Shown: piece by piece, positions 4,358 to 59,419 of the stretch
Layout of the letters: every line of letters begins with the position of its first letter
Numbering within the stretch: position 1 is the first letter of the stretch
Source: Macrostomum lignano
Lineage: Eukaryota
Assembly: GCA_002269645.1 (NCBI GenBank)
Contig: NIVC01001128.1
Span: 215,810-279,809, forward strand
DNA length: 64,000 nt
Direction of reading: 5' to 3'
Position numbers and translations under genes: made by a program
The notes under the pieces: generated by a model
What the model saw: only the letters and a program-made list of their open reading frames with translations
What the model was told of the DNA's origin: nothing
Databases searched by the model: none

Positions 4358-7300
4358 ATGCCAGAAGTTGTAGCTCAACCACAAAAGCAGCAACAGCAGC
4401 AGCAGTACTGCTACTCAACTGAGCAGTACTTTCGACTGCCAGATAAATCATTGACCGCCAATCGGATAGTGATGCGCAATGAGCACTGCCTTGTTGCCTT
4501 CACTTCCGCTGGCTGTCTTCTGCGATTCGAACGAAATCCAACAGTGGCTGATCAGAAACAGCCCAGCTGGAAGGAGGTGCTTCGACTGCCATTGATGAAT
4601 TTTGATGCCTGTCTGTTGGCTGATTCTCAGGCTGCCGATGAGCGTCTGGTGGTGTGGCTCGCTGGGACACTGCGGGTCTACAATATTGACAGTCTGGAGT
4701 GCGGCAGCTTCAGCAGCGTCTGCGGATTGCCTGCTGGGGTTGCCGACGCTGCCTCTGGAGCTCGGGTGGCAAAGATATTGCAGATCTCTGCCGACGAAAT
4801 GCTGCTAATGACTCGCTTGGCAACTGATGCAGTCTATGGTGAGGGCTGTGTGTGCATCATTACTTGGCTGGGCTGTCATCCTCCCTGATCCTCAGTAGCT
4901 GGGCCAGCCTCCCAAATCCTCAGTTGCTGGGCCAGCCTCCCAGATCCCCAGTTGCTGGACCAGCCTCCCAGATCCCCAGTTGTTGAGCCAGCCTCCCAGA
5001 ACCCAACAGGTTGCTGGGCTGTTAGACTCAGAATTTGCAGTCACCAGTTCTCACTGCACTCTCAAGCAGCTCTCATTTGCCCCCTCTCTCTCTTTCTCCT
5101 CGCATGGCAGACTGCTCGCTTCATCCGGTGTGCATCAGCCACCTCCGCCTGCCGCCGGAGTCCACCTGGCCGGACAAGCCGCCGCTGATGGCCGCCACCC
5201 TGGCCTGTGTGGGCCTGCCGGTTCCTCCCGAGCGACTGCTTCGACTGCAATACGACAGCCGTCAGGCCTGCCTGCACTGCCTGACGCCTGACGGTCGAGT
5301 TCTCACCATCGACTGTCTGTCCGGTTGGCTAGTTGACTCTCTGGCAGTGCCTCGGGACACCACCGATCTGCTGCTAGTTCGCAGTCACGCAGAATCGTCA
5401 ATATTAGCTCTGGCTAGTCCCAACAGCGTCACCCTAGTGGAATATCCATCCTGTAGACGTTTGCACCGATTGAGCTTGCCTAGTAAACTTGCCGATGCTC
5501 GCCTACTGGCCTGTCGGTCAACTACTGTTAGTAGAATAATCCAACAGCCGGAATTATTTGTTTGGGGCGGCAACAGTTTAGTGTATCGGCTGCGAGAAAC
5601 TTCGCCAGGTCAGCAGTATCAGAGATTGCTCGACTCGCTACAGTTTGATGAAGCTGAGCTGTGCGCTAAACGGTACGGACTGCCTATGGACCGGTTGTAC
5701 TATGCCAAGTGCAGGCATCTGCTAGATTCAGACTCTTCTAGTGCGTCTTCTTCGACACCCGTGTCGGAGGAGTCCCTGGCTGAGCTGGTCAGCTGTTTGG
5801 ATAAGCTGGCATTCTCTACTGATGTTGAATATTTGCTGTTGTTAAGCAGCTGTCTGAAAGGTGAGGGCTTGCTTTGTTATGAAGTCTGATGTCATACTCT
5901 TTGTTGCCAGGCCTTTGTGATGGTTTTTTATTTTAATCCTTCAGTGTATTGTTTAACCCGAGTCCTTCACACATCCTTCAGTGGCCTGAGCTGCCACCCC
6001 TCTGATCCTTCAGTGGCCTGAGCTGCCACCCCTCTGATCCTTCAGTGGCCTGAGCTGCCACCCCTCTGATCCTTCAGTGGCCTGAGCTGCCACCCCTCTG
6101 ATCCTTCAGTGGACTGAGCCGCCACCCCTCTGATCCTTCAGTGGCCTGAGCTGCCACCCCTCTGATCCTTCAGTGGCCTGAGCTGCCACCCCTCTGATCC
6201 TTCAGTGGACTGAGCCGCCACCCCTCTGATCCTTCAGTGGCCTGAGCTGCCACCCCTCTGATCCTTCAGTGGCCTGAGCTGCCACCCCTCTGATCCTTCA
6301 GTGGCCTGAGCTGCCACCCCTCTGATCCTTCAGTGGCCTGAGCTGCCACCCCTCTGATCCTTCAGTGGCCTGAGCTGCCACCCCTCTGATCCTTCAGTGG
6401 CCTGAGCTGCCACCCCTCTGATCCTTCAGTGGCCTGAGCTGCCACCCCTCTGATCCTTCAGTGGCCTGAGCTGCCACCCCTCTGATCCTTCAATGGCCTG
6501 AGCTGCCACCCCTCTGATCCTTCAGTAGCCTGAGCTGCCACCCCTCTGATCCTTCAGTGGCCTGAGCTGCCACCCCTCTGATCCTTCAGTGGCCTGAGCT
6601 GCCACCCCTCTGATCCTTCAGTGGCCTGAGCTGCCACCCCTCTGATCCTTCAGTGGACTGAGCCGCCACCCCTCTGATCCTTCAGTGGCCTGAGCTGCCA
6701 CCCCTCTGATCCTTCAGTGGCCTGAGCTGCCACCCCTCTGATCCTTCAGTGGCCTGAGCTGCCACCCCTCTGATCCTTCAGTGGCCTGAGCTGCCACCCC
6801 TCTGATCCTTCAGTGGACTGAGCCGCCACCCCTCTGATCCTTCAGTGGCCTGAGCTGCCACCCCTCTGATCCTTCAGTGGCCTGAGCTGCCACCCCTCTG
6901 ATCCTTCAGTGGCCTGAGCTGCCACCCCTCTGATCCTTCAGTGGCCTGAGCTGCCACCCCTCTGATCCTTCAGTGGCCTGAGCTGCCACCCCTCTGATCC
7001 TTCAGTGGCCTGAGCTGCCACCCCTCTGATCCTTCAGTGGCCTGAGCTGCCACCCCTCTGATCCTTCAGTGGCCTGAGCTGCCACCCCTCTGATCCTTCA
7101 GTGGCCTGAGCTGCCACCCCTCTGATCCTTCAATGGTCCTCAATAAAATCTACAAACAGCGCTAATTTACCTTTCTTCATCCCACTAACTCTCCCACAGC
7201 CGCCTGTAACGGGTCCAGTCCCGGCCTGCTCGAGCAGCTCCTAACAACGGTGTCGAATCAGCTGTGCCGCTATTTCTACGACCCATCTGTAGCGGTTGGC

Positions 7301-10300
7301 ACCGAAGCAGCCGATCAGTCCATCCTAGCCCGCTGGTGCGAGACCAGCGATTTAGCCGCCGCAACATTGCAACGCCTACGCGTTTGCTTACAATTGATCG
7401 AGCCGGATCAATTCAGTTTAGAAATGTGGCAATGGTTTCAAACTGTTAATATTTGTTCGTATTTTTGCGACTCTGTACTGCGCAATAATCAAGAGGAATC
7501 GGCTGTACTGTTTGCTAATTATAAGCAGACCATCTGCAGACAATTAGCAGATAGCGGAGAATATCTACAGCTGGTGCTGGACAATCTGCGCTGCTGTCAA
7601 CCGGATGGATTGCTGTCACAGCCTTGGTGCGTCTGGCTGGCTGAGGAGTTCCTGCCGGCTATGGCCGCCTCGCCTGAGTCTGCGAGGTTTGCTCCCATAG
7701 TAAGTTGATCGAGTTATGACAGCTTGCTGTTACCGGCTTGGGAGCTAGAATAGATAGAGTGGATTGGAGTGTTAGATGGAGAGAATTGGAGTGCTAGATT
7801 AAGTGGATTGGAGTGCTAGATAGAAAGGATTTGAGTGTTAAATAGAGAGGATTGGACTTCTAGATAGGGAGAATCAGCAGTGCTAGATAAGGAGAATCAG
7901 GAGTGCTAGATAGTGAGAATCGGGAGTGCTCGATAGGGAGGATCAGGAGTGCTAGACATGGAGGATCAGGAGTGCTAGATAGTGAGAATAAGGAGTGCTA
8001 GATAGTGAGAATCAGGAGTGCTAGATAGGAAGGATCAAGAGTGCTAGACATGGAGAATCAGGAGTGCTAGATATGGAGGATCAGGAGTGCTAAATAGTGA
8101 GAATCAGGAGTGCTAAATATGGAGGAGCAGGAGTGCTAGAAATGGAGGATCAGGAGCGCTAGATAAGGAGGATCAGGAGTGCTAGAAATGGAGGATCAGG
8201 AGCGCTAGATAAGGAGGATCAGGAGCGCTAGATAAGGAGGATCAGGAGTGCTAGATATGGAGGATCAGGAGTGCTAGATAGGGAGGAACAGGAGTGCTAG
8301 ACATGGAGAATGAACAGGAGTGCTAGACATGGAGAATCAGCAGCGCTAGATAAGGAGGATCAGGAGTGCTAGATAAGGAGGATCAGGAGTGCTAGATAGG
8401 TAGGAACAGGAGTGCTAGATAGGGAGGATCAGGAGTGCTAGATATGGAGGATCAGGAGTGCTAGATAGGGAGGATCAGGAGTGCTAGATATGGAGGATCA
8501 GGAGTGCTAGATAGGGAGGATCAGGAGTGCTAGATATGGAGGATCAGGAGTGCTAGATAGGGAGGAACAGGAGTGCTAGACATGGAGAATCAGGAGTGCT
8601 AGATAGGGAGGAACAGGAGTGCTAGACATGGAGGATCAGGAGTGCTAGATAGAGAGAATTAGGAATGCACCTGTACATTCGCTACTCTAATCTCACAGAT
8701 CGCTGATTGGCTAGAGGACTGCATAGACGGCCTGATCCGATTGGACGACTCCGCGGCCACCAAAGCGGACGCCTGCCGCCAGTTCTTAGCCAATCTGCTG
8801 CGCTGCGTTGGCCAACCAACTGAAGAAGCCGGGGACTCGTTTAGCCGCCCCCTGAGCCAGTTAGCTAGGGCTTTAGACGAGCTGGTGTGCCTGTGCTCCA
8901 GGTATAAACTGCGTCTGAGCGTTCGCCTCTACCGGCGTATGGATAAAGGGGATTTGGCCAAGCATATCCTGGATTATATTCTGCTTAGTCAGGATGCCGG
9001 CCTGTTTGGCCTGTTTGGAGCTTATTTGCAGGTGAGCCTCGCTGAAATGACCCCTGGTTCGATTCCGTGCGCAGCCACAATTTTCATTTTGGGGTTTTGC
9101 TCGTGCTCAGAAGCGCAAGTATCTGTACTATAAAAATACGAATTTCCTCCCGCAGGAGTGCGGCCTTAATAGCGACCAATTCTATTGCGACTATTGTTCA
9201 GCCAGGCTGCAGGCAGCCAGTGCTGCAACAGACGCGGCTATGCATATGATTGGCTCCAATAATGATGCAGCCAATCATCTGCATGGCAGCGACAGCCACG
9301 GCAGCGGTGTGAGTCCTCAGGATGCTGAGAGGACCGCTGTCACCGTACTCGGTCGAATAGTTAACGAAGACGCCAGGATGCGTTGTACTATTATGCTAGC
9401 CGAGCAGGCGACTGTGCCGTGGTCAGAGGAGGTGCAAGCAGTTGTTGAGCAGCATCTGGCTTTGAGGCATCGGCCTGATCGGGTAGTGCTGCAGCGGGCT
9501 GTAACGGCGGCTAAGACTCAGGCGCTGTTTAAACGGTAAGGCTGACTGGGGGTCTAGAGGTAGAGAAATGGGGTGTTGGCTGGGGTTAGCGGCTCATTGG
9601 GAGTGGTCTGTAGGGAGAGAAATGGGGTGGTGGCTGGGGTTAGCGGTTCACTGTGGGTCTGGAGGGAGAGAAATGGGGTGGTGGCTGGGGTTAGTGGCTC
9701 ATTGGGGGTGGTCTGTAGGGAGAGAAATGGGGTGGTGGCTGGGGTTAGTGGCTCATTGGGGGTGGTCTGTAGGGAGAGAAATGGGTGTCTCATTAGGGGT
9801 CTGGGGGGAGAGAAATGGGTGTTGGCTGGGGTTAGAGGCTCACTGTGGGTCTGGAGGGAGAGAAATGGGGTGGTGGCTGGGGTTAGTGGCTCATTGGGAG
9901 TGGTCTGTAGGGAGAGAAATGGGGTGGTGGCTGGGTTAGCGGTTCACTGTGGGTCTGTAGGGAGAGAAATGGGGTGGTGGCTGGGGTTAGTGGCTCATTG
10001 GGGGTGGTCTGTAGGGAGAGAAATGGGGTGGTGGCTGGGGTTAGTGGCTCATTGGGAGTGGTCTGTAGGGAGAGAAATGGGGTGGTGGCTGGGGTTAGTG
10101 GCTCATTGGGGGTGGTCTGTAGGGAGAGAAATGGGGTGGTGGCTGGGGTTAGTGGCTCATTGGGAGTGGTCTGTAGGGAGAGAAATGGGGTGGTGGCTGG
10201 GTTTAGTGGCTCATTGGGGGTGGTCTGTAGGGAGAGAAATGGGGTGGTGGCTGGGGTTAGCGGTTCACTGTGGGTCTGTAGGGAGAGAAATGGGGTGGTG

Positions 10301-13300
10301 GCTGGGGTTAGTGGCTCATTGGGGGTGGTCTGTAGGGAGAGAAATGGGGTGGTGGCTGGGGTTAGTGGCTCATTGGGAGTGGTCTGTAGGGAGAGAAATG
10401 GGGTGGTGGCTGGGGTTAGTGGCTCATTGGGGGTGGTCTGTAGGGAGAGAAATGGGGTGGTGGCTGGGGTTAGCGGTTCACTGTGGGTCTGTAGGGAGAG
10501 AAATGGGGTGGTGGCTGGGTTAGTGGCTCATTGGGGTGGTCTGTAGGGAGAGAAATGGGGTGGTGGCTGGGTTTAGTGGCTCATTGGGGGTGGTCTGTAG
10601 GGAGAGAAATGGGGTGGTGGCTGGGGTTAGCGGTTCACTGTGGGTCTGTAGGGAGAGAAATGGGGTGGTGGCTGGGGTTAGTGGTTCACTGTGGGTCTGT
10701 AGGGAGAGAAATGGGGTGGTGGCTGGGGTTAGTGGCTCATTGGGAGTGGTCTGTAGGGAGAGAAATGGGGTGGTGGCTGGGGTTAGTGGCTCATTGGGAG
10801 TGGTCTGTAGGGAGAGAAATGGGGTGGTGGCTGGGGTTAGTGGCTCATTGGGAGTGGTCTGTAGGGAGAGAAATGGGGTGGTGGCTGGGGTTAGCGGTTC
10901 ACTGTGGGTCTGTAGGGAGAGAAATGGGGTGGTGGCTGGGGTTAGTGGCTCATTGGGGGTGGTCTGTAGGGAGAGAAATGGGGTGGTGGCTGGGTTAGCG
11001 GTTCACTGTGGGTCTGTAGGGAGAGAAATGGGGTGGTGGCTGGGGTTAGTGGCTCATTGGGGGTGGTCTGTAGGGAGAGAAATGGGGTGGTGGCTGGGTT
11101 TAGTGGCTCATTGGGGGTGGTCTGTAGGGAGAGAAATGGGGTGGTGGCTGGGGTTAGCGGTTCACTGTGGGTCTGTAGGGAGAGAAATGGGGTGGTGGCT
11201 GGGGTTAGTGGCTCATTGGGGGTGGTCTGTAGGGAGAGAAATGGGGTGGTGGCTGGGGTTAGTGGCTCATTGGGAGTGGTCTGTAGGGAGAGAAATGGGG
11301 TGGTGGCTGGGGTTAGTGGCTCATTGGGGGTGGTCTGTAGGGAGAGAAATGGGGTGGTGGCTGGGGTTAGTGGCTCATTGGGAGTGGTCTGTAGGGAGAG
11401 AAATGGGGTGGTGGCTGGGGTTAGCGGTTCACTGTGGGTCTGTAGGGAGAGAAATGGGGTGGTGGCTGGGGTTAGTGGCTCATTGGGGGTGGTCTGTAGG
11501 GAGAGAAATGGGGTGGTGGCTGGGGTTAGCGGTTCACTGTGGGTCTGTAGGGAGAGAAATGGGGTGGTGGCTGGGGTTAGTGGCTCATTGGGGGTGGTCT
11601 GTAGGGAGAGAAATGGAGTGGTGGCTGGGTTTAGTGGCTCATTGGGGGTGGTCTGTAGGGAGAGAAATGGGGTGGTGGCTGGGGTTAGTGGCTCATTGGG
11701 AGTGGTCTGTAGGGAGAGAAATGGGGTGGTGGCTGGGGTTAGTGGCTCATCGGGGGTGGTCTGTAGGGAGAGAAATGGGGTGGTGGCTGGGGTTAGCGGT
11801 TCACTGTGGGTCTGTAGGGAGAGAAATGGGTGTTGGCTGGCGTTAGAGGCTCACTGTGGGTCTGGAGGGAGAGAAATGGGGTGTTGGCTGGGGTTAGAGG
11901 CTCACTGTGGGTCTGTAGGGAGAGAAATGGGGTGTTGGCTGGCGTTAGAGGCTCACTGTGGGTCTTGAGGGAGAGAAATGGGGTGGTGGCTGGGGTTAGT
12001 GGCTCATTAAGGGTCTGTTGGGAGAGAAATAGTGTGGTGGCTGGGGTTAGCAGCTCAGCGGTTTAGTAGGCCCAGGGGTCTGGGGAGTGAGGTGGCGTTA
12101 GCTGCTCACTAAATGGCCTCGAGAAACAAGAGACTCGAGTAATTGCTTACTGAAAAAAAGGGTATAAATGAATGTATAGTGACAGGCCCAAGCCACAAAT
12201 AAAAATAGAAAAGAGAATTTCTTATCTGTTTTGTATTATCAATTTGTTCGACTGCTTTTCAACAGTGAGACACACCCACCATTTAAAACCCCTAAAACAT
12301 TTAACAGCTACAATATCAGGCAGCACGACGCCAGCCAGCAGGACGCCCAAGCTAGGGCAGCTTTAAAAGGCCTATTCTCACAGCTGGCCAGCGGCCGAGT
12401 TACTCCGGCCACTGTCCGAGCCGATCTGCTACTATTAACGGACACGTTTGGATTTACAGTCTCGGATTTAATGACCGTGGCCGTTGATTGCGCTTTGAAA
12501 GAGGGTAGTTCCGTTAAGTGAGTAGTTGTGTTTGTCTGTTTTAATTAGTATGATTACGTAATTAACGTAAGGGAAAAATTATAGAACAAGGCATTCGGAG
12601 TATTTAATTACAGGTTTATAGTTACTCTCGTCGCTAACCTGAGCAGCCCTTTAATCTTTTGTGTCTTTAGCTCGTATAATTAGAACTAAAGAAATTGTAG
12701 AGCTGGTACCGCTAGATGTAAAATAGTTCTAATTAGATGACGAGGCGCTTAGTTATAATTGCTCTTACTGTTTACCCTTGCGGTGTGCTGTGAGGCATTG
12801 AAAGCGAATATCGCATTTCAATAATCGGTCGGTTTGGGTGCCCAGCCCAAGCGCTATACCGTAGTACCAACAGGTGTTGTGACGTTCTGCTTATTCTATA
12901 TTAATACTGACAGGCGTTATGACGCTCTGGCAAGAAGGAACTCTAGCCCTGCCTAGCAAGCTTCCCGGAAATAAAAGATTAACTCAAAGCAGGCAAACTC
13001 AAAGTGGCCGAGTAACGGACGCTTCTTATATTTAAATACTCAAGTTGAACTCAATCACAGAACTCAAATCGGTGATGGTTGGCTAATAGGTCCTGACTGT
13101 CGACTAATACTAATAGTCGACGTCTGGTGCTGCTCTTCTCTGACCCGTTCTCTGGGTTTTACTTAATCTAAATCTACAAATCGCTATGACCGATGTTTGT
13201 TTGACAAACAAAAAGGGCGAGATGCGAGAGAAAAAGGGCGCACAACAATAAATAGCAAACTCAGGCCTGGGGGCAGGGGGATAGACTGCCCGATCGGCTA

Positions 13301-16300
13301 AGCCGACGAGAACAGAACACGCACTGGCCAGCCAATCAAACCCCGCCTGGGGGAGAGGGTGCAGCACGCACAAAGCCCCGCGGCCAGCCAAACCTTGACC
13401 TGGCTCACGTCAACTCCAAGCTAGCACAAAAGTGCATCGCGCCGTGCCAAAAAGACAAGGGCAAATGCACTACAATTTCATAGTGCACGTCGTAGATGAT
13501 TCGTCGGTCGTGTCCCAGCTGACCAGGACTTTGCCAACTAACCAAGTAATCAAGTTTCCTCTTTACTGTGTCAACAGTACCCTGTTCCTCGGCTATCCTT
13601 TTCGGAACGACTTTGCCGTCTACCAGGTCGTAGAAAATTGTCAGCACCGATCAGAAGGGAGACTGGCTCATTGGCATCGCGGAGATCAAACGGATTGGCA
13701 AGATTAAGAGGCTGAATTTCTGAATGTGCGTCCAACATCACTGATGTTTGAGGTTTGCAGATCCAAGAAGTCGTGTAGCCTTTCAAAGAAACATAATTTC
13801 CGTCCTTGGAACCCGTTCTCAGAATGTGGCATCATACGATGTTCGATGTAGATTCGCTGCATCTTGTTCCAAAAGTGTTGCCACGCAGCACTTTACTTGC
13901 CTGTGTTGTAAAGCTCAACTGGCTGCTCATGTCCTGTCTGATGTAGGTTTTATTAATGGCGGTATCTAATAACTCGTAGATCAACACTCCCCAGTCAAAA
14001 CGATGCCGTTGCCTTGTCGTCGTTAACACGTCAAAAATAACGTCGCCAAATAAGCCATTTTGTCGCACGCGGTGACGTTGCTATTACGACCCCAGGCAAC
14101 GTTAGAATTTCACGTTACTGATGACCAAACGGCGATCATTCATTACAGATTGCATATACTTAGCACAGATGCTTAGCACCTTCAATATACCGAGAATCTC
14201 GAATCTATAATTCAATAAGTTTGTTCTAAGGTAGGGAATAAAAATAAACTAAGTTTATGGAGTTTATAGGTCTATGGAGATCATGGAGTATAGACTCTGG
14301 ACATCACAGGTTGCCAGAGTCCATCCTTCTGTGCAAAATTTATCCATAAGGTGTGCTTTGAAGTCATATGAGTCCTTAATGAAAGTGGGTTGAGCTTAGG
14401 CAATCGGATTAAGAAAAAAATCAATGCATTTTTCTGCCAGTGGCTTCAGAACTACATCGGCTAACAATAGGTCTGTCTGCTCGGACCCGGAAATCACATC
14501 ACATCACAGAATCACAAGATCAGGGTTCTTGTGAGTTTTTGGTAGCAGGTAGAAATGCCCGGGGCGAAGACAAGAGAACTGTTTGTTTGATATAAACTTT
14601 TTGCTACATAAAATGAGAAAGATCCACCTGATAATTTCCGCAGTCTCGGGTTTCGACGGCTGGTCCAGCTTTTGATAGGCATTAGTGTCAAGCAATTGGT
14701 CGTAGGCTGCAAGTTTGCATGATGACTACTGCGTTTCCTTTGTCCGCCTTTTATATTAGGACGGAGCTGTTTCGCTCCTGAATCGCTCTTGTCTCTGGTG
14801 CTAGCGGGCTAACTAACCCTCTTCAGCTCTCCAAAGAACTAGCTCAAGTGGATTCATAAAAATTTAAAGAGAACCAAAGAATAGTACGCACATAGCCACA
14901 AACTGTTCAGATGTAGCGTTATTGTATTTAATCGAAAAGTAGCTAAGCTTAGTACCGGCTAATAGCGGTCTAGGCGCATGAGCATGGCTGACTGACATCA
15001 AGCGGTCAGAAACGCAGACAAGTGCAAGGTCGTTAAGCCAAGTCAAGTTAACCCAATACAGTAGGCTGAAAGTAATGATATGCAAAAAAGGCATGCGATC
15101 AGTCATTAGAAAAATATAATTCACACACTCCTGCGGCAACCTAGATCGCAGTCGGTGGACATACTTCTCAGCACTAGCCAACGCCCAGCGAGCCGTCGCA
15201 GCAACCTGCGTGCAGTGCGTCGAGCATGCGCGCAGAGTTGAATTCGAAGTAAAGCAGACCCTGCTTCATTAAGCTTGTGGCATAAGCTACGTAGTTGCTG
15301 CTCATATAAGACATCAAGGCAGTAACGAGCTCAGCATCGACGTACTTTGTCGCAGGCAGGCCTGGAAAGCTAACGTCAGTCCGGTTTTAATACCGTGCAC
15401 TTGGCGGTACCACGTCCAAGCCATTCATTACTAACAGGTGTCATTGCGGTCAGCAGTGTTACACGAAGCTCACCATCGTTGTAGGTGCGCCAGTAAGCCA
15501 TCAGGCAACGCCAGACAATACCACAGATATGGCGGGGCATCCCACGGCGGTACAGCACTTGCGCGCTCATTTGGTACGCTCTGCATCTTGTAGCATGGTC
15601 GAGGAGCTCGGCGCCTTGTAACTGTTGCAAAACGAACGTTGACACAGCACGGAGTGGATAGAGTACAGTACGCTTAAGAGTTCACCGACGCCGCGACCTG
15701 ACAACTGCTTAGAATCACGCAGCTCAAAGCCCCTCACTTCCGCGTGCTGTACAAAGTGACGTTCCAGCAGCGGCTGAAAGTAGTGACCCATACGTCGTCA
15801 CCTTGGTTGATACGCTTCATCAACTGCGAATTCAATCCGGCGTATTGGCGCACAACGATCATCGCGATATCAAAGTAGACAACATTTAAGATAATATTTT
15901 GATAATTAATGCTACGTTGACCAGACGGCATTTCTTGCGTGACGCGTATCAGCTGTTGAAAGCCACGACACCTCATAACTGATTCAGCATAGCGCGGCTG
16001 GCCTACCAAAGGGGTTTTGACACGTCTTGACTAAAGCTCAGATTGCACATGACACGACCTAATTGCTTGACGAAATACACTGCTGATGAGCTGCAAAAGC
16101 ACGGGGTAGATTATTAGATTAACCAGGCAGGACATGCAGTTGATTAAATCGTAGAGTCAAGAGAGCAGGAGAGAGTGAGAGAGCAGAAGAATATCAATAT
16201 TTTTATAATACACTGTAGATGTAAATTCCAGTCTAGTTCCGATCCGATGCGCTGAGGTTCAAAGCGCGGCTTGTTCTTTGACTGTTAGTGAGTCATTTTC

Positions 16301-19300
16301 ACTGTTCGGACGCCTTGCAGTAAAATTTCACTATTAGGGCCTGTATAATATATGGGCCGGCTGATGATATATTTCTCAAGAACTCCGAGTCACTAGGCGA
16401 TTCTCTACGTGTGATATTGCATATATGCGTTGTATCATTGGCTGGCTCATTTGTTTATATGGCAAGGTGAGAAGAAATCTTGTAAGTAGGCAAGCTCACT
16501 ATGGACTACAAGTCACTAACAAATACAGGATCTTGGTTTGAAATCAGAAATCATACCTTGCAAAAGTTCCCATCAAGTAAGTTTAATATACAAGTAGGAA
16601 GCACACTACCAACATGCCTAAAAATTTAGAGTCAAGTGCACTAGACATGGCATACTCTAGCTCATGGGCTATAGAGACGTGGATAACATTCAATCAAATT
16701 TGAGTACATTAGCAAAGCCATGCAAGCCAAACCTGTGCTAAACCAACCAACATAAAAACTTTTATATTCATGTTTTGTATTCTTTACTCGTACATTGTCC
16801 AACTAATTGAAATCGGCTACCAGTGGTTTAACTTACCTTGATCCACTCGATGCAAAATCAATACAAATAATTATGCACTATTGCGAGTAATGGAATGAAG
16901 AGCACTTGTAGAACGGAGAATAGCTCGGCAGATTTTTTCAGATACGTGCGTAGTAAAGCATTATCATTTAAGGCTGATTTTATTTTCGCCTCAAGAGGGC
17001 TTCAGGACATGTGTGCAGGAGGCTAAGTGTCGTAGGGGGGGGACAAGAAAGTGTACGAGTACATCTTAAAGCTTAAAGTGCGCCAGGGTGCACGCAGCCC
17101 CCCTCCCCTGACCTCTAGCTAAAACAAATTTACCTATGACACAATACCAGATGCCGCGACCTACTGGCCTGTCCATTGCGCGATCTGGGCATCACTGTTA
17201 GCCTTCAGGATCGTCTGCAAGCCGCTCTGCGCTGCGTTCAACGCGCCCACATCGGCCTACAATTATATAATCCAGCCTACGTATCTGCTAACGAGGCCGA
17301 CTTTCTACTCGATCTTGGTTGCCTAGCAACGGACGCATATTTTTCCCAGCTATCCGAGGCCGGCTCCGATCCCGGTCCAGCCGGCCTCGAATCCGCCGTC
17401 GTAGCTCGAATCGGTCGAACTATTCGATTAATGCGATTTACCTGGCGAGCTGCTCGGTTGCTAGGCAACACTGTGCCAGATTATGAGCGCCTAATTGACA
17501 ACGGAGACGCCGCGGCGGTCGCTTATTTGGCTAAGCTGCACGGCTTGCCAAGCTCTGATTGGCTGCGCCAGCTGGCTAGTCTTCTGCTTCTAGTAGATAA
17601 CAAAAATTTGGGGGTCTCCGGCTCAACTGACACGCCTAAGCTTCTGCCATTGTTAGTGCCGGCACTGCTCACTGTTGATGGACTGTCGGTGTGGCGGGTC
17701 GCTCAGCTGCTGCTGGATGCTGGGCTGGTGAGTCATGGAATGGGATATCGGATTTCTAGCTTTATGATTCATAATATATTGGGATCTTGGATTTTTTAAA
17801 CTATATCTGTAATTGAGATTAAGGTTAATGATTCATAACTGGGATTTGAGAATTCAAGGTTTATGAATAACAGTTTGTGTCTATGATTTCAAGATTTCTG
17901 ATTCATAATTGGGACCTGGGGGATTTCAAGATTTATGATTCATATAATTGGGATCTGGGGGGATTTCAGATTTATTATTCATAATTGGGATCTGGGGGGG
18001 CTTCAAGATTTATGATTCATATAATTGAGATCTGGGGGATTTCAATATTTATGATTCATATAATTAAATTGGGATCTAGGGGATTTCAAGATTTATGATT
18101 CATATAATTGGGATCTGGGGGGATTTCAGATTTATTATTCATAATTGGGATCTGGGGGGGGGCTTCAAGATTTATGATTCATATAATTGGGATCTGGGGG
18201 GATTTCAATATTTATGATTCATATAATTGGGATCTGGGTGGGATTTCAGATTTATGATTCATAATTGGGATCTGGGGGGATTTCAAGATTTATGATTCAT
18301 ATAATTGGGATCTGGGGGGATTTCAAGATTTATGATTCATATAATTGGGATCTGGGGGGATTTCAAGATTTATGATTCATAATTGGGATCTGGGGGGACT
18401 TCAAGATTTATGATTCATATAATTGGGATCTGGGGGGATTTCAAGATTTATGATTCATAATTGGGATCTGGGGGGACTTCAAGATTTATGATTCATATAA
18501 TTGGGATCTGGGGGGATTTCAAGATTTATGATTCATAATTGGGATCTGGGGGGACTTCAAGATTTATGATTCATATAATTGGGATCTGGGGGGATTTCAA
18601 GATTTATGATTCATAATTGGGATCTGGGGGGACTTCAAGATTTATGATTCATATAATTGGGATCTGGGGGGATTTCAAGATTTATGATTCATAATTGGGA
18701 TCATAAAGTAGCGCGTATACATTATTGCTCTTTTATTGCAATTTACAATACAAACTGAGACCAAAACAATACAATGCAAATACAAACTCCCAATTCCTTT
18801 CGCTTGCAGTCGGAACTGGCCGCCCGACAAAACTTGGACGCTTTGCTCAAAGCGGCCCGAGTCTCACTGCTCGAACTTGACGATGACAGCGATATTGACA
18901 GTATCTCCGATTCTAATAGCGACATTAGCAGCGGCCTGTCCGCTCTAGGCGAGTTGCTAACCATCGCTTGCCGACTCGGAGGATTCGGTTCCGCCTTGTC
19001 GCTTCATCGCTTGCACACCTGTCTGCGTATTATTCAATCCTGCCGCTGTTGCTGCTGTCTGGCCGAGTCTGGCGCAGTGAACTCAAGCGATTCAGCTGCC
19101 CAGCTAGGCATGGCACTGGAGGTTCGCTATGAGGATTCCGCAATAATGTCGCTGCCGTCTACTCAGAGATTGATGTTTCTCAAATTGACTGGCCAGATGA
19201 TGCGGCTGACTGAACGAGCGTCGGATGCTGCGCCTGCGGTTGCGATCGATCAGGTGAGAGGAGTCGTTATTGCGATTGTTAAAGTACTGTCTTCCAGTTG

Positions 19301-22300
19301 TTCCTACCGATCACGAAATTCTTGCTTCGTTCTTTCTTTCTTTTATTCCTCCTTTTCTACAAATCCCATATTCTCCTTTCCAGGCAATTAGACTTGATTC
19401 TCGTTTCCTGGAAATCCCTCTCTCGTTTCCTTGAAATCCCACTTGCCCTTCGTTTCCTGGAAATCCCTCTCTCGTTTTCCTTGAAATCCCACTTGCCCTT
19501 CGTTTCCTGGAAATCCCTCTCTCGTTTCCTTGAAATCCCACTTGCCCTTCGTTTCCTGGAAATCCCTCTCTCGTTTTCCTTGAAATCCCACTTGCCCTTC
19601 GTTTCCTGGAAATCCCTCTCTCGTTTTCTTGAAATCCCACTTGCCCTTCGTTTCCAGGAAATCCCTCTCTCGTTTCCTTGAAATCCCACTTTTTTGCCCT
19701 TCGTTTCCTGGAAATAATACTTACCCCTCATTTACTTACCGGAAACCCACTTACCCATCGATGCCTGGAAATCTCACTGGACTCTCGTTTCCTGGAAATC
19801 CCAAATGCCCCTCGTTTCCTGGAAATCCCACTTACCTCTCGTTTCCTTAAAATCCCAAACGCCCCTCGTTTCCTGGAAATCCCACTTACCTCTCGTTTCC
19901 TTGAAATCACACTCTTATTTCTCCGAAAATGCAACTTCTTCCTTTTCTATTAATACCATTTATTTTCCTTTCCTGAAAAATCACATGGTTTTGTAATCCT
20001 TTAATCACCTAGACGCCCAGCAACGCGGCCCTAATTAACCTGGCTAGTCAGGCCATCGACACTCTTCGACTAGCTGGCCGCCCCTTAGCCGCCCTCACCC
20101 TGGCAACTCTGCTAAGCGAATTACAAGACAATACGGACTCATTAGGTGCCGCGGACAGTTTGCCGTCAATCTGCCAGGACCGCTGTCATGCGCTACTAAC
20201 TGGACTGTTATCTCAGCGTCTGGAAGCGAAACTAATCGACAAACAGCTGTGCCAGTCCACCGCCTGGTCTCTCCCGGAATCCGTTGGCCAGTCCGTTCTA
20301 CAACGGGTCGCGCAGAAATCTCGGCACTCATACAATCGATTGGAGTTCATCGCTCGCCTAGCCTATCACTATGGTGCTCAGCGGGGCAATCCTGAGCACG
20401 CTAAACGGGCACTGGCTCTGGCTAAGGGAGCCTATTGGAGTAGGACTCTGTCCGCTTTGGGTATTAAGATTGGCGACTTGACGGTGAGGAATCTAACTAT
20501 CCTTAGATCCCATCAGTTTATCCCATCCCAGATCCCACTAATTTATCCCATCCCAGATCCCATCAATTTATCCCATCCCCAGATCCCATCAATTTATTCC
20601 ATCCCAGATCCCATCAATTTATCCCATCAATTTATCCCATCTCAGATCCCATCAATTTATCCCATCCCAGATCCCATCAATTTATCCCATCCCAGATCCC
20701 ATCAATTTATCCCATCCCCAGATCCCATCAATTTATCCCATCCCAGATCCCGCCAATTTATCCCATCCCAGATCCCATCAACTTATATCATCCCCAGATC
20801 CCAAAAATGTACGCCATCTTAAGTTCTCTTAATCCGTTGTCTCTACAGATTCGAGAATCCTAGCTACAACAACAGCTGGAACCTTTATTAGATTGCACTT
20901 CACTTATGAAAATATTTCCCAGATCCTACAGTATACACTTTTTGCAAAGCGATATTTACCCTTACTATATCTGTCTGCTAATATCGCAAATATTGATTAG
21001 GCACCTGGCAAAGCGGCTGAATGCGCCGAGACTCTGTGCAGTCTACCTGTGTCTAAATCGCTGCAGCCTGATTTACTGCTATACTACTGTCAGCAGTATC
21101 AGCAGCCCGCTACCGCTCACCTGCTGCGCTACCTCGAAAATCTATTGTTTCCGCAGTCTGGCAGTCAGGTGTGTTCTTGGCGCTTTTAATGCGCTTTTGC
21201 TTTTCTAAATGTGGGTTGTCACCTTCCTACACTGTCAGTTACTGGGCCAGTCTCATCCTCAGTTGCTGGGCCAGCCTCATCCTCAGTAGCTGGGCCAGCC
21301 TCCCAGATCCTCAGTTAGTCGCTGGGCGAGTCTCCCAGATCCTTAGTTGCTGGGCCAGCCTCCCAGATACTCAGTCAGTTGCTGGGCCAGCCCCCCAGTT
21401 TCTCAGTTGCTGGGCCAGCCTCCCAGATACTCAGCTGCTGGGCCAGCCTCCCAGATCCTCAGTCAGTTACTGGGCCAGCCTCCCAGATACTCAGTCAGTT
21501 GCTGGGCCAGCCTCCCAGATCCTCAGTTGCTGGGCCAGCCTCCCAGATCCTCAGTCAGTTGCTGGGCCAGCCTCCCAGATCCTCAGTTGCTGGGCCAGCC
21601 TCCCAGATCCTCAGTTGCTGGGCCAGCCTCCCAGATCCTCAGTTGCTGGGCCAGCCTCCCAGATACTCAGTCAGTTGCTGGGCCAGCCCCCCAGTTTCTC
21701 AGTTGCTGGGCCAGCCTCCCAGATACTCAGTTGCTGGGCCAGCCTCCCAGATCCTCAGTCAGTTGCTGGGCCAGCCTCCCAGATACTCAGTCAGTTGCTG
21801 GGCCAGCCTCCCATATCCTCAGTTGCTGGGCCAGCCTCCCAGATTCTCAGTCAGTTGCTGGGCCAGTTCCCTCATCATCCCCATATCTGACTGGTGCCGC
21901 ACACGCAGGTGGAGGTCAGACAAGGTGCCGTGAACCTGGCCGGCGCCACCCTTGCCGTACTGAAGCGGGTGAGCCATCCGGACGAGCTGCTCAACCGTCT
22001 ACTCGGCTACTACGCTCAGTTGGATCCGTACGAATACGAGTCTATCGAGCTGATCTGCTGCAGCCTGCTAGCGATGCCGCAGTGCCCCGAGGCCCAGGCT
22101 GCTCATTGTAGCAGAGCTCTGCAGTTGCTCGCTTCGTTGAAGCGCTACAGACGAGTGTCTCAGATTAGCAGCTACGAGAGGAACTGGTGAGGACTTGTCA
22201 ATTCTGACTGCGTGACGCTGTGACACCCCCAATTCTGAATGCGTGACGCTTCCGGTTCTGAATGCGTGACGTCTTCAATTCTGGATGCGTGACGCATCCG

Positions 22301-25300
22301 ATTTTGAATGCGTGACGCTGTGGTGTCTTCAATTCTGAATGCATGACGCTTCTGATTCTGAATGCGTGACGCCTCTGATTCTGAATGCGTGTGACGCCTC
22401 CGATTCTGAATGCGTGACGCTGTGACACCTTCTTCTGAATGCGTGACGCTTCTGATTCTGAATGCGTGACGCTGTGACGCCTCCAATTCTGAATGCGTGA
22501 CGCTGTGACACCTTCAATTCTGAATGCGTGACGCTTTTGATTCTGAATGTGTGACGCCTCTGATTCTGAATGCGTGACGCTTCTGATTCTGAATGCGTGT
22601 GACGCCTCCGATTCTGAATGCGTGACGCTTCTGCTTTTGAATGCGTGACGCTTCCGGTTCTAAATGCGTGACACCTCCGATTCTGAATGCGTGACGCCTC
22701 GTATTCTGAATGCGTGACGCCTCCGATTCTGATCACGTGACGCCTTCAATTCTTAATGCGTGACGCCTCCGATTCTGAATGCGTGACGCCTCCGATTCTG
22801 ATCACGTGATGCCTTCAATTCTTAATGCGTGACGCATCCGATTCTAAATGCGTGACGCTGTGACACCTTCAATTCTGAATGCGTGACGCTTCTGCTTTTG
22901 AATGCGTGACGCCTCCGATTCTGATCACGTGATGCTGTGACGCCTCCAATTCTGAATGCGTGACGCCTCCGAATCTGAATGTGTGACACCTGTAATTCTG
23001 TACTTATAATGAGTGTGTCTGGTGTCCTGGCTCGGATTAACGTGTTGTTACATTAATTTTATTTACTTATTTACGCTCTGTGCCCTTGTTTACGCTCTGT
23101 TGCATATCCGCATTGAAACCGCAGGTACCAGAAGCGAATGCAGCGGCCAGACCTGGCCGAATGGTACTTCACCTCAGCGTCCGCCATCAATTCGAAGTCG
23201 TCGCGTCGTTTAAATTTATTCGCCCTACTGGAGCCCAAGCTGTACAAAATTGTGAATCCAGAATTAAGATTCGACACTCTGGACTATTGGCTGGGCGTGT
23301 CCGATCTCATTGGCATATCCGAGACCGAGCTTAAACTTTCCGCCGCTGATAAGATATTCGAGGAAGCGTTCGGTCACTCGCATCTGCAGCACCAGCAGCA
23401 GCAACAGCACGAGGCTAAAGTTAATAATTGGGCCACCCAACCCGACTTAGCCAGTCAGATGGCTGTGGCCAGGATGGAAAAGGTTGGCTTTGTTGTTGTG
23501 TCACTTGTTTAGGGTGTGTTGTGTCACTCGTTTAGGGTGTGTTGTGTCACTCGTTTAGGGTGTGTTGTGTCACTTGTTTAGGGTGTGTTGTGTCACTCGT
23601 TTAGGGTGTGTTGTGTCACTCGTTTAGGGTGTGTTGTGTCACTCGTTTAGGGTGTGTTGTGTCACTCGCTTAGGGTGTGTTGTGTCACTCGCTTAGGGTG
23701 TGTTGTGTCACTCGCTTAGGGTGTGTTGTGTCACTCGTTTAGGGTGTGTTGTGTCACTCGCTTAGGGTGTGTTGTGTCACTCGTTTAGGGTGTGTTGTGT
23801 CACTCGTTTAGGGTGTGTTGTGTCACTCGCTTAGGGTGTGTTGTGTCACTCGCTTAGGGTGTGTTGTGTCACTCGCTTAGGGTGTGTTGTGTCACTCTTT
23901 TAAGGTGTGTTGTGTCACTCGTTTAGGGTGTGTTGTTTCACTCGTTTAGGGTGTGTTGTTTCACTCGCTTAGGGTGTGTTGTGTCACTCGCTTAGGGTGT
24001 GTTGTGTCACTCGCTTAGGGTGTGTTGTGTCACTCGCTTAGGGTGTGTTGTGTCACTCGTTTAAGGTGTGTCACTGATATGATCAATGCTGTCACTGATA
24101 TGATCAATGCTGTCACTGATATGATCAATGCTGTCACTGATATGATCAATGCTGTCACTGATATGATCAATGCTGTCACTGATATGATCAATGCTGTCAC
24201 TGATATGATCAACGGTGTCACTGGTATGATCAATGGTGTCACTGATATGATAATGGTGTCACTGATATGATCAATAGTGTCACTGGTATGATCAATAGTG
24301 TCACTGGTATGATCAATAGTGTCACTGGTATGATCAGTAGTGTCACTGGTATGATCAATAGTGTCACTGGTATGATCAACAGTGTCACTGGTATGATCAA
24401 TAGTGTCACTGGTATGATCAATAGTGTCACTGGTATTATCAATGGTGTCACTGATATGATCAATAGTGTCACTGATATGATCAATGGTGTCACTGATATG
24501 ATCACCTCGCTCCCGTACAGGTGCTAACTAGCGTATACGATTCGGAGCGAGCTTTGCACGTGGCATTCGCCATGCTGAAGCGAACTAGCTTGGGCTGGTT
24601 GAAGCTGCGCATAACCCGAATCTGCCTGGCAGTTTGCCAAGCCTGGTCTGAGACTGAAACTACCGCTGCGCCGCCGCAGCCGCCTGCGACACTTCAACAG
24701 CAGAAACTAACCGGCGGTGCCGCGCAACAGTCGATTCATCGGGCCGAAGCTTCGTTGAAACGCTATCGCGACATTCTAGAAGCTCTGGAATGCGAGCAGG
24801 CACTACACGCCAACGGATTAAGCGACTGCTCAGATTTGGCTAAGCTGTGCTCAAGTCCTAGCGAACTGCTCGATCGACTGGTCTCGGCCGGTGAAGCCGA
24901 GGCTGCCAGTCAGGTGGCCGAGATTTTGGGCGCAGATCTGTCAGCTGTGGTTGCTAAGCGCGTGCAAGATTGGCTAGGCATTAAGCCGGCTGGATCGGGG
25001 GCCGATGGCTCGCCTGGTGAGTTGGCTGGGAGGGGCTTCTGATTAATGATGTTTGATTTTTTGTTAGATAGGTATCAGATAGTACTATCGCAGTATTAGG
25101 GTTATCGAATCACTCCTATTAGCTCCCTAAGAATCACTCCTATTAGTATTAGCTCCCTAAGGATCTCCCTAGGGATCACTCCTACTCGCTCCCTAAGGAT
25201 CACTCCTACTCGCTCCCTAGGGATCACTCCTATTACTCCCTATAGATCACTCCTATTAGCTCCCTATATATCACTCCTATTAGCTCCCTATATATCACTC

Positions 25301-33424: not shown

Positions 33425-33790
33425 CAACTAGGAGGCTGGCCTAGCAACTGAGGATCTGGAAGGCTGGAATAGCAACTGAGGATCTAAGAGGCTGGAACAG
33501 CAACTGAGGATCTGGGAGGCTAGCCCAGCAACTGAGGATCTGGGAGGCTGGCCCAGCAGCTGAGGATCTGGGAGGCTGGCCCAGCAACTGAGGATCTAAG
33601 AGGCTGGCCCAGCAACTGAGGATCTGGGAGGCTGGCCCAGCAACTGAGGATCTGGGAGGCTGGCCCAGCAACTGAGGATCTGGGAGGCTGGCCCAGCAGC
33701 TGAGGATTTGGGAGGCTGGCCCAGCAACTGAGGATCTGGGAGGCTGGCCCAGCAACTGAGGATCTGGGAGGATTGTGGCCCAGCAACTGA
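33425..33790. repeat. Family A minisatellite in reverse orientation, between ACAD and WDR37
   Basis: GCTGGCCCAGCAACTGAGGATCTGGGAG is the reverse complement of family A. Confidence 0.95.

Positions 33791-49222: not shown

Positions 49223-59419
<10,197 letters not shown>

What the first reader, a model, noticed from the sequence alone, without database searches (positions are those of the whole stretch)
12875..16090. Co-oriented virus-Penelope-Bel/Pao chimera, all antisense to the KNTC1 pre-mRNA
Seen: on the minus strand the order is viral RdRp, then a PLE RT fragment (KADKGNAVVIM...FYLLPKTHK...RPIVS) starting only about 40 bp after the last EVE-associated ORF, then a Bel/Pao protease remnant and a possible LTR. 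This is the only long KNTC1 intron without a minisatellite. Known: non-retroviral EVEs in mosquitoes are associated with Bel/Pao and Ty3 LTR elements and yield antisense piRNAs. Inference: viral RNA was captured by RT template switching. Because KNTC1 is transcribed in dividing cells (stem cells, germline), the excised intron would supply antisense RNA against three parasites at once, acting as an intronic mini piRNA/siRNA trap.
Basis: partly seen in the sequence, partly recalled or inferred. Interest (0 to 1): 0.75.

Follow-up and report, generated by a model that had tools for sequence, protein, structure and literature searches.

The report
Toti-like viral fossil beside Penelope fragment
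One intron of the kinetochore gene KNTC1 holds a broken, truncated piece of a toti-like RNA-virus polymerase gene next to a broken piece of a Penelope-like retrotransposon, both antisense to the gene; this looks like an ordinary viral fossil with transposon debris, and nothing here shows that it works as a small-RNA defence locus.

Summary
KNTC1 lies on the + strand, shown by Pfam KNTC1 domains in flanking exons. The finding lies in a ~4.6-kb intron, the only one in the window without a minisatellite.

- **Viral fragment, minus strand 15177-15990: confirmed.** It is a toti-like RdRp fragment. The best of 84 hits among 1.84 billion proteins has E 6.7e-10, all nine relatives tested carry Pfam RdRP_4, and named relatives are Totiviridae sp. 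and Murri virus. It covers about a quarter of the polymerase and is frameshifted. Identity to any known virus is only 33-43%.
- **Penelope-like fragment, 14267-14807: confirmed.** It covers profile positions 181-340 of 782. The RT core and the GIY-YIG endonuclease are missing.
- **"Bel/Pao protease" and "LTR": not supported.** Pfam, PDB and structure prediction gave nothing, and there is no repeat partner. Only a weak, post-hoc two-motif resemblance remains.

About 380 nt of unassigned DNA separates the two verified fragments. Their closeness and shared orientation fit the known copy-choice model for such fossils, but the Penelope piece lacks the 3' end that a single priming event would need.

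No small-RNA data, second genomic copy or orthologous locus could be reached. The piRNA-trap idea is therefore untested. The block is most likely inert.

The parts
15177..15990 (-). Fragment of a toti-like virus RdRp gene (non-retroviral endogenous viral element). It covers profile positions 528-786 of 997, from just before palm motif B onward. It is truncated on the motif-A side and broken by at least three frameshifts. One part, first base to last.
14808..15176 (-). Unassigned spacer between the two verified fragments. It could be the poorly conserved C-terminal part of the RdRp, but no similarity shows this.
   Evidence: No hit to the toti or PLE profiles. Pfam found nothing. Toti profile positions 787-997 carry little information, 0.32 bit per position.
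14267..14807 (-). Fragment of a Penelope-like element ORF: the N-terminal DKG block through RT motif A, profile positions 181-340 of 782. It lacks the first 180 positions and everything after position 340 (RT core, thumb, GIY-YIG). It is broken by at least three frame changes and at least one in-frame stop. One part, first base to last.
13408..14080 (-). Claimed Bel/Pao protease remnant. It is unverified. The only support is a retropepsin-like motif pair, an aspartyl-site-like pentapeptide followed about 110 codons later by a hydrophobic-hydrophobic-G-x-D block. It is broken by at least one stop and one frame change.
   Evidence: No hit in Pfam, PDB, viral contigs or the 120 fetched loci. The AF2 model is useless. 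The motif pair occurs once in the window and in 1% of shuffled introns, a post-hoc count.
12875..13400 (.). Claimed 'possible LTR'. This is unassigned intronic DNA with no repeat partner.
   Evidence: No direct repeat found. A sensitive blastn of 12.5-13.4 kb against 16.0-17.2 kb gave a best score of 21 bits, equal to the shuffled mean of 21.3. Pfam found nothing and Rfam found nothing.
12518..17150 (+). KNTC1 intron that hosts the block. This is a splice model: a GTGAGT donor after the open frame 12183-12517, and an AG acceptor before the open frame that runs on to 17796. Phase 2 and the reading frame are kept. No minisatellite lies inside.
   Evidence: Sequence read, open frames, TRF. This is inferred and not checked against transcripts.
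5035..25042 (+). The stretch of the host gene KNTC1 whose exons carry recognisable KNTC1 domains on either side of the finding.
   Evidence: Pfam ARM_KNTC1_1st, ARM_KNTC1_3rd and Rod_C hits in increasing order along the + strand.

Best explanation
The block is decayed genomic debris with no function of its own.

Shown: a cDNA copy of part of the polymerase gene of a toti-like double-stranded RNA virus lies in a KNTC1 intron. About 380 nt downstream, on the same strand, lies a fragment of a Penelope-like retrotransposon ORF. Both fragments are truncated, frameshifted and antisense to KNTC1.

Inferred:
- The viral RNA was copied by a retroelement reverse transcriptase and entered the genome together with, or into, retroelement sequence. 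This is the copy-choice or template-switch route proposed for such fossils elsewhere.
- Later deletions or insertions removed the 3' half of the Penelope copy and the 5' half of the viral copy.
- The antisense orientation reflects chance plus the usual purging of sense-oriented insertions from introns.

Today the + strand of the block is simply transcribed as part of the KNTC1 pre-mRNA and removed by splicing. The supposed Bel/Pao protease and LTR are unassigned intron sequence until a curated repeat library says otherwise.
For: Identity of the viral piece. These give 84 hits with best E 6.7e-10, RdRP_4 in 9 of 9 relatives, four collinear stretches, and named toti-like relatives.

Identity of the PLE piece. 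The comparators are RT+GIY-YIG ORFs. Four collinear stretches matched, including one at 2.3e-7 that is independent of the fetching pattern.

Decay and truncation:
- Three reading frames are used in each fragment.
- The well-conserved profile positions are missing: toti 401-527 (0.85 bit per position) and PLE 341-520 (0.72-0.74 bit per position).

No sign of a complete element: there are no LTR pair, terminal repeats, hammerhead ribozyme or tRNA.

Linkage: these are the only toti-like and PLE-like matches in 64 kb, they are about 380 nt apart and they share a strand.

Literature: co-oriented EVE-retrotransposon pairs and the copy-choice idea. Toti-like EVEs are common in arthropod genomes (PMC10636211).

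Distance from any known virus: 33-43% protein identity.
Against: - Function cannot be excluded without expression and small-RNA data.
- The intron is unusual in this gene: it is the only one without a minisatellite and is one of the longest. It has a history of its own.
- The shared origin of the EVE and PLE pieces rests on proximity and orientation only. The junction lies somewhere in about 380 nt of unassigned DNA.
- The source organism is unknown. Copy number, age and population status could not be examined.
Confidence: 0.6

Rival explanations
1. The insertions are independent. The viral cDNA and the Penelope-like copy, and whatever the third piece is, arrived at different times in an intron that tolerates insertions. 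No mechanism links them. Proximity and shared orientation reflect chance and selection against sense-oriented insertions.
For: - About 380 nt of unassigned DNA lies between the homology blocks.
- The PLE piece is truncated on both sides. That needs extra events anyway.
- Three pieces share a strand one time in four by chance (inference).
- This is the only KNTC1 intron in the window that is not filled by a minisatellite, so it may be the only place where foreign fragments remain recognisable.
Against: These are the only two such fragments in a gene-dense 64-kb window, and they lie within 400 nt of each other. Under uniform independent placement this has a chance of a few per cent (rough, post hoc). 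Co-oriented EVE-retroelement neighbours are a documented non-random pattern.
Confidence: 0.22
2. All three pieces were joined in one reverse-transcription run by serial template switching (retropepsin-bearing LTR-element RNA, then Penelope RNA, then viral RNA) and integrated as a single co-oriented chimera.
For: - The verified pieces share a strand. The viral piece lies upstream of a 5'-truncated PLE piece. That is the layout expected if an RT copying the PLE RNA toward its 5' end jumped onto viral RNA (inference).
- Template switching is the published model for EVE-LTR hybrids.
- The whole ~4.6-kb intron is far larger than the non-repeat part of its neighbours, so one large insertion is conceivable.
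Against: - The third component is not verified as Bel/Pao or as any retroelement.
- The order protease then 'LTR', with no RT, RNase H or integrase between them, is not a Bel/Pao layout.
- No LTR partner was found.
- The PLE piece lacks the 3' end where target-primed synthesis starts.
- No junction can be read at base level.
Confidence: 0.1
3. The intron, transcribed with KNTC1 in dividing and germline cells, supplies antisense RNA that is processed into piRNAs or siRNAs against the virus and the two retroelements. This would be a miniature intronic trap.
For: - The geometry is right. The KNTC1 pre-mRNA carries the antisense strand of the verified fragments.
- In mosquitoes, antisense nrEVEs in clusters driven by transcription of neighbouring genes do yield antiviral piRNAs.
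Against: - No small-RNA evidence is available.
- The block is about 3 kb with two verified fragments, against clusters of tens of kb.
- The documented mosquito mechanism is read-through downstream of genes, not spliced introns.
- The viral piece is only 33-43% identical in protein to every known relative and is frameshifted. Base-pairing with any known virus is not expected.
- Antisense orientation of intronic insertions has a simpler explanation (established knowledge of orientation bias).
Confidence: 0.06
4. The viral piece is not a genomic fossil. It is contamination or a mis-assembly of viral sequence into the contig.
For: The source assembly could not be inspected.
Against: The fragment is frameshifted several times and truncated. 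It is embedded between KNTC1 exons that keep a consistent splice phase. It lies next to another decayed element. A live viral contaminant would have an open reading frame.
Confidence: 0.02

Closest known systems
Toti-like non-retroviral endogenous viral elements of arthropod genomes (for example the Aedes toti-like NIRVS in PMC6580184, planthopper ToEVEs in PMC10636211, and an unannotated copy in the sandfly Sergentomyia squamirostris, GAB0089599.1)
   Same: It is a fragment of an RdRP_4-type polymerase gene embedded in host DNA, pseudogenised, and only distantly related to sampled exogenous viruses.
   Different: The host organism is unknown. The fragment is short, about a quarter of the polymerase, and lies inside an intron of a housekeeping cell-division gene rather than in a repeat-rich cluster. 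No evidence of expression or co-option exists.
Co-oriented EVE / LTR-retrotransposon pairs in Aedes aegypti, explained by copy-choice template switching (Whitfield et al., bioRxiv 10.1101/127498; Palatini et al., PMC5497376)
   Same: The viral fragment and its nearest retroelement fragment are on the same strand and close together.
   Different: The verified neighbour is a Penelope-like element, not Ty3/gypsy or Bel/Pao. In the two surveys read, Penelope showed no enrichment near EVEs. No LTRs are present. This is a single locus, so there are no statistics.
Canonical endonuclease-positive Penelope-like elements (RT + GIY-YIG)
   Same: The N-terminal DKG block, the PK-HK and RPIVS blocks and RT motif A are collinear with 49 metagenomic RT+GIY-YIG ORFs. 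The fragment is closest to the class with 13-14 residues between the PK-HK and RPIVS blocks, at about 32-33% identity.
   Different: Only about 160 of 782 profile positions are present. There are no RT core, GIY-YIG domain, terminal repeats or hammerhead ribozyme. It is a fragment, not an element.
Core piRNA clusters of mosquitoes with antisense nrEVEs, driven by transcriptional read-through (bioRxiv 10.1101/2022.08.22.504762)
   Same: Host-gene transcription would produce RNA antisense to the viral fragment.
   Different: It is an intron, not a read-through region. It is about 3 kb with two verified fragments. No small-RNA data exist. The organism is unknown.

Membership tests
Toti-like virus RdRp (Pfam RdRP_4, PF02123) | Significant sequence similarity to proteins that carry the RdRP_4 domain | tested here: met
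   84 hits at E<=1e-3, best 6.7e-10, in 1.84e9 proteins. 9 of 9 top hits carry RdRP_4 at 1e-35 to 1e-47. Local profile E 8e-21 and 6e-14. Named toti-like relatives.
Toti-like virus RdRp (Pfam RdRP_4, PF02123) | Direct match of the window's own fragment to the Pfam model | tested here: not met
   hmmscan of the single open stretches gave no RdRP family at E<=1. The fragment is short and diverged, so membership rests on the chain through relatives.
Toti-like virus RdRp (Pfam RdRP_4, PF02123) | Complete palm: motifs A, B and C | tested here: not met
   Motifs B and C are present. The motif-A side, profile positions 1-527, is absent although positions 401-527 are well conserved.
Non-retroviral endogenous viral element | Virus-derived sequence embedded in host chromosomal DNA and no longer an intact gene | tested here: met
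   It lies between KNTC1 exons. It is truncated and read in three frames.
Non-retroviral endogenous viral element | Germline-inherited, present at the same locus in other individuals or species | not testable with these tools
   No homologue of the flanking exon and no window ORF is in the protein collections.
Penelope-like element | PLE-type RT N-terminal blocks (DKG, PK-HK, RPIVS, motif A) in order | tested here: met
   Four collinear stretches against a profile of 49 RT+GIY-YIG ORFs: E 0.006, 1e-10, 0.2 and 2.3e-7. The reversed control had best E 0.59.
Penelope-like element | RT core motifs after motif A, and the thumb | tested here: not met
   Nothing matches profile positions 341-620, although positions 341-520 are well conserved.
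Penelope-like element | C-terminal GIY-YIG endonuclease | tested here: not met
   No match to profile positions 621-782 anywhere in the window. Pfam found nothing.
Penelope-like element | Terminal repeats with a hammerhead ribozyme | tested here: not met
   No repeats. Rfam found nothing at gathering score, and the only hammerhead hit is 16 bits at E 4.1 on the wrong strand.
Bel/Pao LTR retrotransposon | Protease, RT or integrase domains recognisable by profile | tested here: not met
   No Pfam family at E<=10 for the claimed protease stretches. Nothing else in the intron on either strand. PDB search found nothing.
Bel/Pao LTR retrotransposon | Retropepsin active-site block and the downstream G-x-D block | tested here: inconclusive
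   A degenerate pair is present once in the window and in 1% of shuffled introns. The motifs were defined after seeing the sequence and do not separate Bel/Pao from other retropepsins.
Bel/Pao LTR retrotransposon | Pair of long terminal repeats | tested here: not met
   No direct repeat between the flanks above shuffled controls.
Template-switch (copy-choice) virus-retroelement chimera | Viral and retroelement parts on the same strand and adjacent | tested here: met
   Both are on the minus strand, about 380 nt apart, and they are the only such matches in 64 kb.
Template-switch (copy-choice) virus-retroelement chimera | A readable junction, and the same junction in other copies | not testable with these tools
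   The junction lies in unassigned DNA. There is no other copy in the window, and the source genome could not be reached.
Template-switch (copy-choice) virus-retroelement chimera | Presence of the retroelement end from which reverse transcription starts | tested here: not met
   The 3' part of the PLE is absent.
piRNA cluster / small-RNA source locus | Small RNAs map to the locus with strand bias, 1U bias or a ping-pong signature | not testable with these tools
piRNA cluster / small-RNA source locus | Many nested parasite fragments antisense to one long transcription unit | tested here: inconclusive
   Two verified fragments are antisense to KNTC1 within about 1.7 kb. That is far fewer and smaller than documented clusters.

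The most novel reading that the evidence does not exclude
The viral and Penelope-like fragments are the two halves of one reverse-transcription product. A Penelope-like RT copying its own RNA jumped onto toti-like viral RNA. If so, Penelope-like elements, and not only LTR elements or LINEs, can endogenise double-stranded RNA viruses. The intron-borne antisense copy might in addition feed small-RNA pathways.
Probability: 0.12. Interest if true: 0.55.

Novelty: new member of a known kind. Interest (0 to 1): 0.25.

Why it matters
The finding adds one more toti-like viral fossil, from a lineage no closer than 33-43% protein identity to any sampled virus. It documents a viral fossil whose nearest retroelement neighbour is a Penelope-like element rather than an LTR element.

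If whole-genome data showed the same junction in other copies, Penelope-like elements would be implicated in capturing RNA-virus sequences, which has not been reported. As it stands, this is a single decayed locus of the kind routinely found in invertebrate-type genomes. Its proposed defence role is untested.

Tried and rejected
- **Word-index protein searches.** The RdRp piece, the PLE piece and the flanking exon all returned nothing. Only the exhaustive search found the RdRp relatives.
- **Pfam on single open stretches of the intron, both strands.** Nothing was found.
- **PDB sequence search.** The RdRp piece gave only marginal picornavirus 3Dpol hits at E about 0.6. The protease-like piece gave none, and the flanking exon gave none that meant anything.
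- **IMG/VR scans.** The RdRp piece, the protease-like piece and a PLE DNA pattern gave nothing.
- **AlphaFold2 on the protease-like stretch without an alignment.** Mean pLDDT was 29, which is unusable, so no fold search was run.
- **Comparators for Bel/Pao.** I looked among 157 non-PLE ORFs of the fetched metagenome loci and found none.
- **Other copies in the window.** blastn and tblastx of 12.5-17.15 kb against the rest of the window found no second copy.
- **LTR pair, TSD, hammerhead ribozyme, tRNA.** None were found.
- **Exact look-ups of 20 window ORFs in the 15-billion-protein collection**, to find the organism or an orthologous locus: none is present.
- **Idea rejected.** The 133-codon open stretch between the two fragments cannot be counted as viral. 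It has no similarity to anything, and an open stretch of that length is expected about 0.5-1 time by chance in this intron (my estimate).

Full report
**Setting.** The window is eukaryotic and gene-dense.
- On the + strand, ORF 5035-5889 matches Pfam ARM_KNTC1_1st (8.7e-8) and 7250-7708 matches the same domain further along (3.6e-5). ORF 20160-20822 matches ARM_KNTC1_3rd (7.5e-12), and 24521-25042 matches Rod_C weakly. KNTC1 therefore runs left to right across the finding.
- Downstream lie an acyl-CoA dehydrogenase and a WD40 gene on the + strand, then RPL4, an RNase H ORF and IFRD on the minus strand.
- The two open frames next to the finding (12183-12517 and from 17151 to 17796) can be joined by a GTGAGT donor and an AG acceptor that keep phase and frame. 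This gives an intron model of 12518-17150. It is inferred, not checked against transcripts.
- Every other inter-exon gap of KNTC1 in the window is mostly one minisatellite array.

**The viral piece.** On the minus strand one 98-codon open stretch carries polymerase palm motifs B and C.
- The word-index search found nothing, and PDB gave only marginal picornavirus 3Dpol hits.
- Exhaustive phmmer against 1.84 billion representatives gave 84 hits at E<=1e-3. The best was 6.7e-10, and almost all were proteins of about 1000 residues matched around positions 500-650.
- Nine of nine top hits carry Pfam RdRP_4 at 1e-35 to 1e-47.
- The named hits are RdRps of Totiviridae sp., Murri virus (known from mosquito viromes) and a toti-like virus from swan faeces. 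Another is a genome-encoded hypothetical protein of a sandfly. The unnamed hits sit on 5-8-kb Logan contigs, the size of toti-like genomes.
- tblastn of all 84 proteins against the window hits only the minus strand between about 15990 and 15177.
- A profile of 37 full-length relatives matches four collinear stretches that use three reading frames. Together they cover positions 528-786 of 997, with E 8e-21, 6e-14, 3e-4 and 0.07. Nothing else in the window matched, and a reversed-sequence control had best E 9.2.
- Positions 401-527, which include the motif-A side, are well conserved in the profile (0.85 bit per position) yet absent, so the 5' truncation is real. Positions 787-997 are poorly conserved (0.32 bit per position), so the 3' limit is uncertain.
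- Identity to the best relatives is 33-43%.
- Verdict: a genuine, decayed, toti-like endogenous viral element with at least three frameshifts, covering about a quarter of the polymerase.

**The Penelope-like piece.** Pfam and the word-index search found nothing.
- To obtain comparators I scanned metagenome contigs with a degenerate DNA pattern written from the window's own PK-HK and RPIVS codons.
- Of 120 loci, 60 have a 15-nt gap between the two blocks, and nearly all the rest have gaps that are multiples of three. The match sits in ORFs of 700-960 codons.
- Ten of ten tested ORFs carry RVT_1 and/or GIY-YIG, which is the canonical Penelope-like architecture.
- A profile of 49 such ORFs (782 positions) matches four collinear minus-strand stretches at positions 181-340, with E 0.006, 1e-10, 0.2 and 2.3e-7. 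The last stretch and the DKG stretch contain none of the letters used for fetching, so they are independent evidence. The reversed control had best E 0.59.
- tblastn puts the fragment at 14807-14267. It is closest, at 32-33% identity, to the class with 13-14 residues between the two blocks. tblastx of the whole intron against the loci hits nowhere else.
- Profile positions 341-520 (the RT core) are well conserved (0.72-0.74 bit per position) and absent, as is the GIY-YIG part.
- Verdict: a real Penelope-like fragment, truncated on both sides, with at least three frame changes and at least one stop.

**The third piece and the 'LTR'.** For 14080-13408 the searches returned no named or significant hit.
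- Pfam gave nothing at E<=10, PDB nothing, IMG/VR nothing and the fetched loci nothing.
- A single-sequence AlphaFold model had pLDDT 29.
- A retropepsin-like pair of short motifs on one strand occurs once in the window and in 1% of shuffled introns. I defined the motifs after seeing the sequence, and they would not separate Bel/Pao from other retropepsins. The protein family I had in mind is the Bel/Pao protease region (Pfam DUF1758 and Peptidase_A17). It did not come back as a hit.
- The 'possible LTR' (12875-13400) has no partner. The best alignment between the two unassigned flanks scores 21 bits, against a shuffled mean of 21.3. No hammerhead ribozyme, tRNA or other RNA family is present.

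**Are the pieces one product?**
- Evidence for a link:
  - In 64 kb these are the only toti-like and Penelope-like matches. They lie about 380 nt apart on the same strand. Independent uniform placement would give this a few per cent of the time (rough, post hoc).
  - The viral piece lies upstream of a 5'-truncated Penelope piece. That is the layout expected if an RT moving toward the 5' end of Penelope RNA jumped onto viral RNA.
  - Co-oriented EVE-retrotransposon neighbours are a documented, highly non-random pattern in Aedes and are explained by copy choice.
- Evidence against a single unmodified event:
  - The Penelope piece lacks its whole 3' side, where target-primed synthesis starts.
  - The junction is hidden in unassigned DNA.
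  - The third member is unverified.
- No second copy exists in the window. The source genome and its relatives could not be reached. A shared origin of the two verified pieces is therefore plausible but not shown.

**Does it do anything?**
The KNTC1 pre-mRNA contains the antisense strand of both verified fragments.
- Nothing else supports a small-RNA role. There are no data. The block is about 3 kb. The documented mosquito mechanism uses read-through regions and clusters of many EVEs, not spliced introns.
- The viral fragment is frameshifted and far from every sampled virus. Antisense orientation of intronic insertions is expected from selection against sense-oriented ones (established knowledge).
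- I therefore rate the block as inert debris, passively transcribed and spliced out, at about 0.6. The functional reading is at about 0.06.

**Comparison and novelty.**
- The viral piece belongs to the known class of toti-like non-retroviral EVEs.
- The neighbour belongs to canonical Penelope-like elements, but only as a fragment.
- The pairing resembles the Aedes EVE-LTR pairs, except that the neighbour is a Penelope-like element. In the two surveys I read, that class showed no enrichment near EVEs.
- This makes the locus a new member of a known kind, with one modestly unusual feature that only whole-genome data can evaluate.

**Limits.** The organism is unknown. 

Noticed in passing
window 21255-21866, 31867-32448, 33431-33790, 63705-63937: The same 28-nt minisatellite unit forms four separate arrays, two in each orientation, in introns or flanks of at least three different genes. 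This looks like a dispersed minisatellite family, possibly carried by a mobile element.
   Followed up: no
window 4000-27000 (KNTC1) and beyond: Almost every intron in the window is mostly one minisatellite array with a period of 20-54 nt and up to 166 copies (for example 40417-44394). Intron length in this genome seems to be set by minisatellites.
   Followed up: partly
window 58208-59215, minus strand: A 336-codon ORF has a Pfam RNase_H domain (5.6e-11). Arrays of one 44-46-nt unit flank it on both sides (57604-58111, 59069-59194). It could be host RNase H1 or a retroelement remnant.
   Followed up: no
L071:1-2442, L001:13-2247 (metagenome loci): Penelope-like elements fetched from metagenomes often carry a long upstream ORF. 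Two of these ORFs have NADAR and/or GDSL-lipase domains.
   Followed up: no
P0018 (GAB0089599.1, Sergentomyia squamirostris, 96-kb contig): The relative with the highest summed tblastn score against the window's viral fragment is a genome-encoded 'hypothetical protein' of a sandfly. It is probably another unannotated toti-like endogenous viral element.
   Followed up: no
window 16346-16456, + strand: A weak Rfam match to the mir-6 precursor family (23 bits, E about 1, far below the gathering score) lies inside the unassigned part of the intron. It is most likely chance.
   Followed up: no
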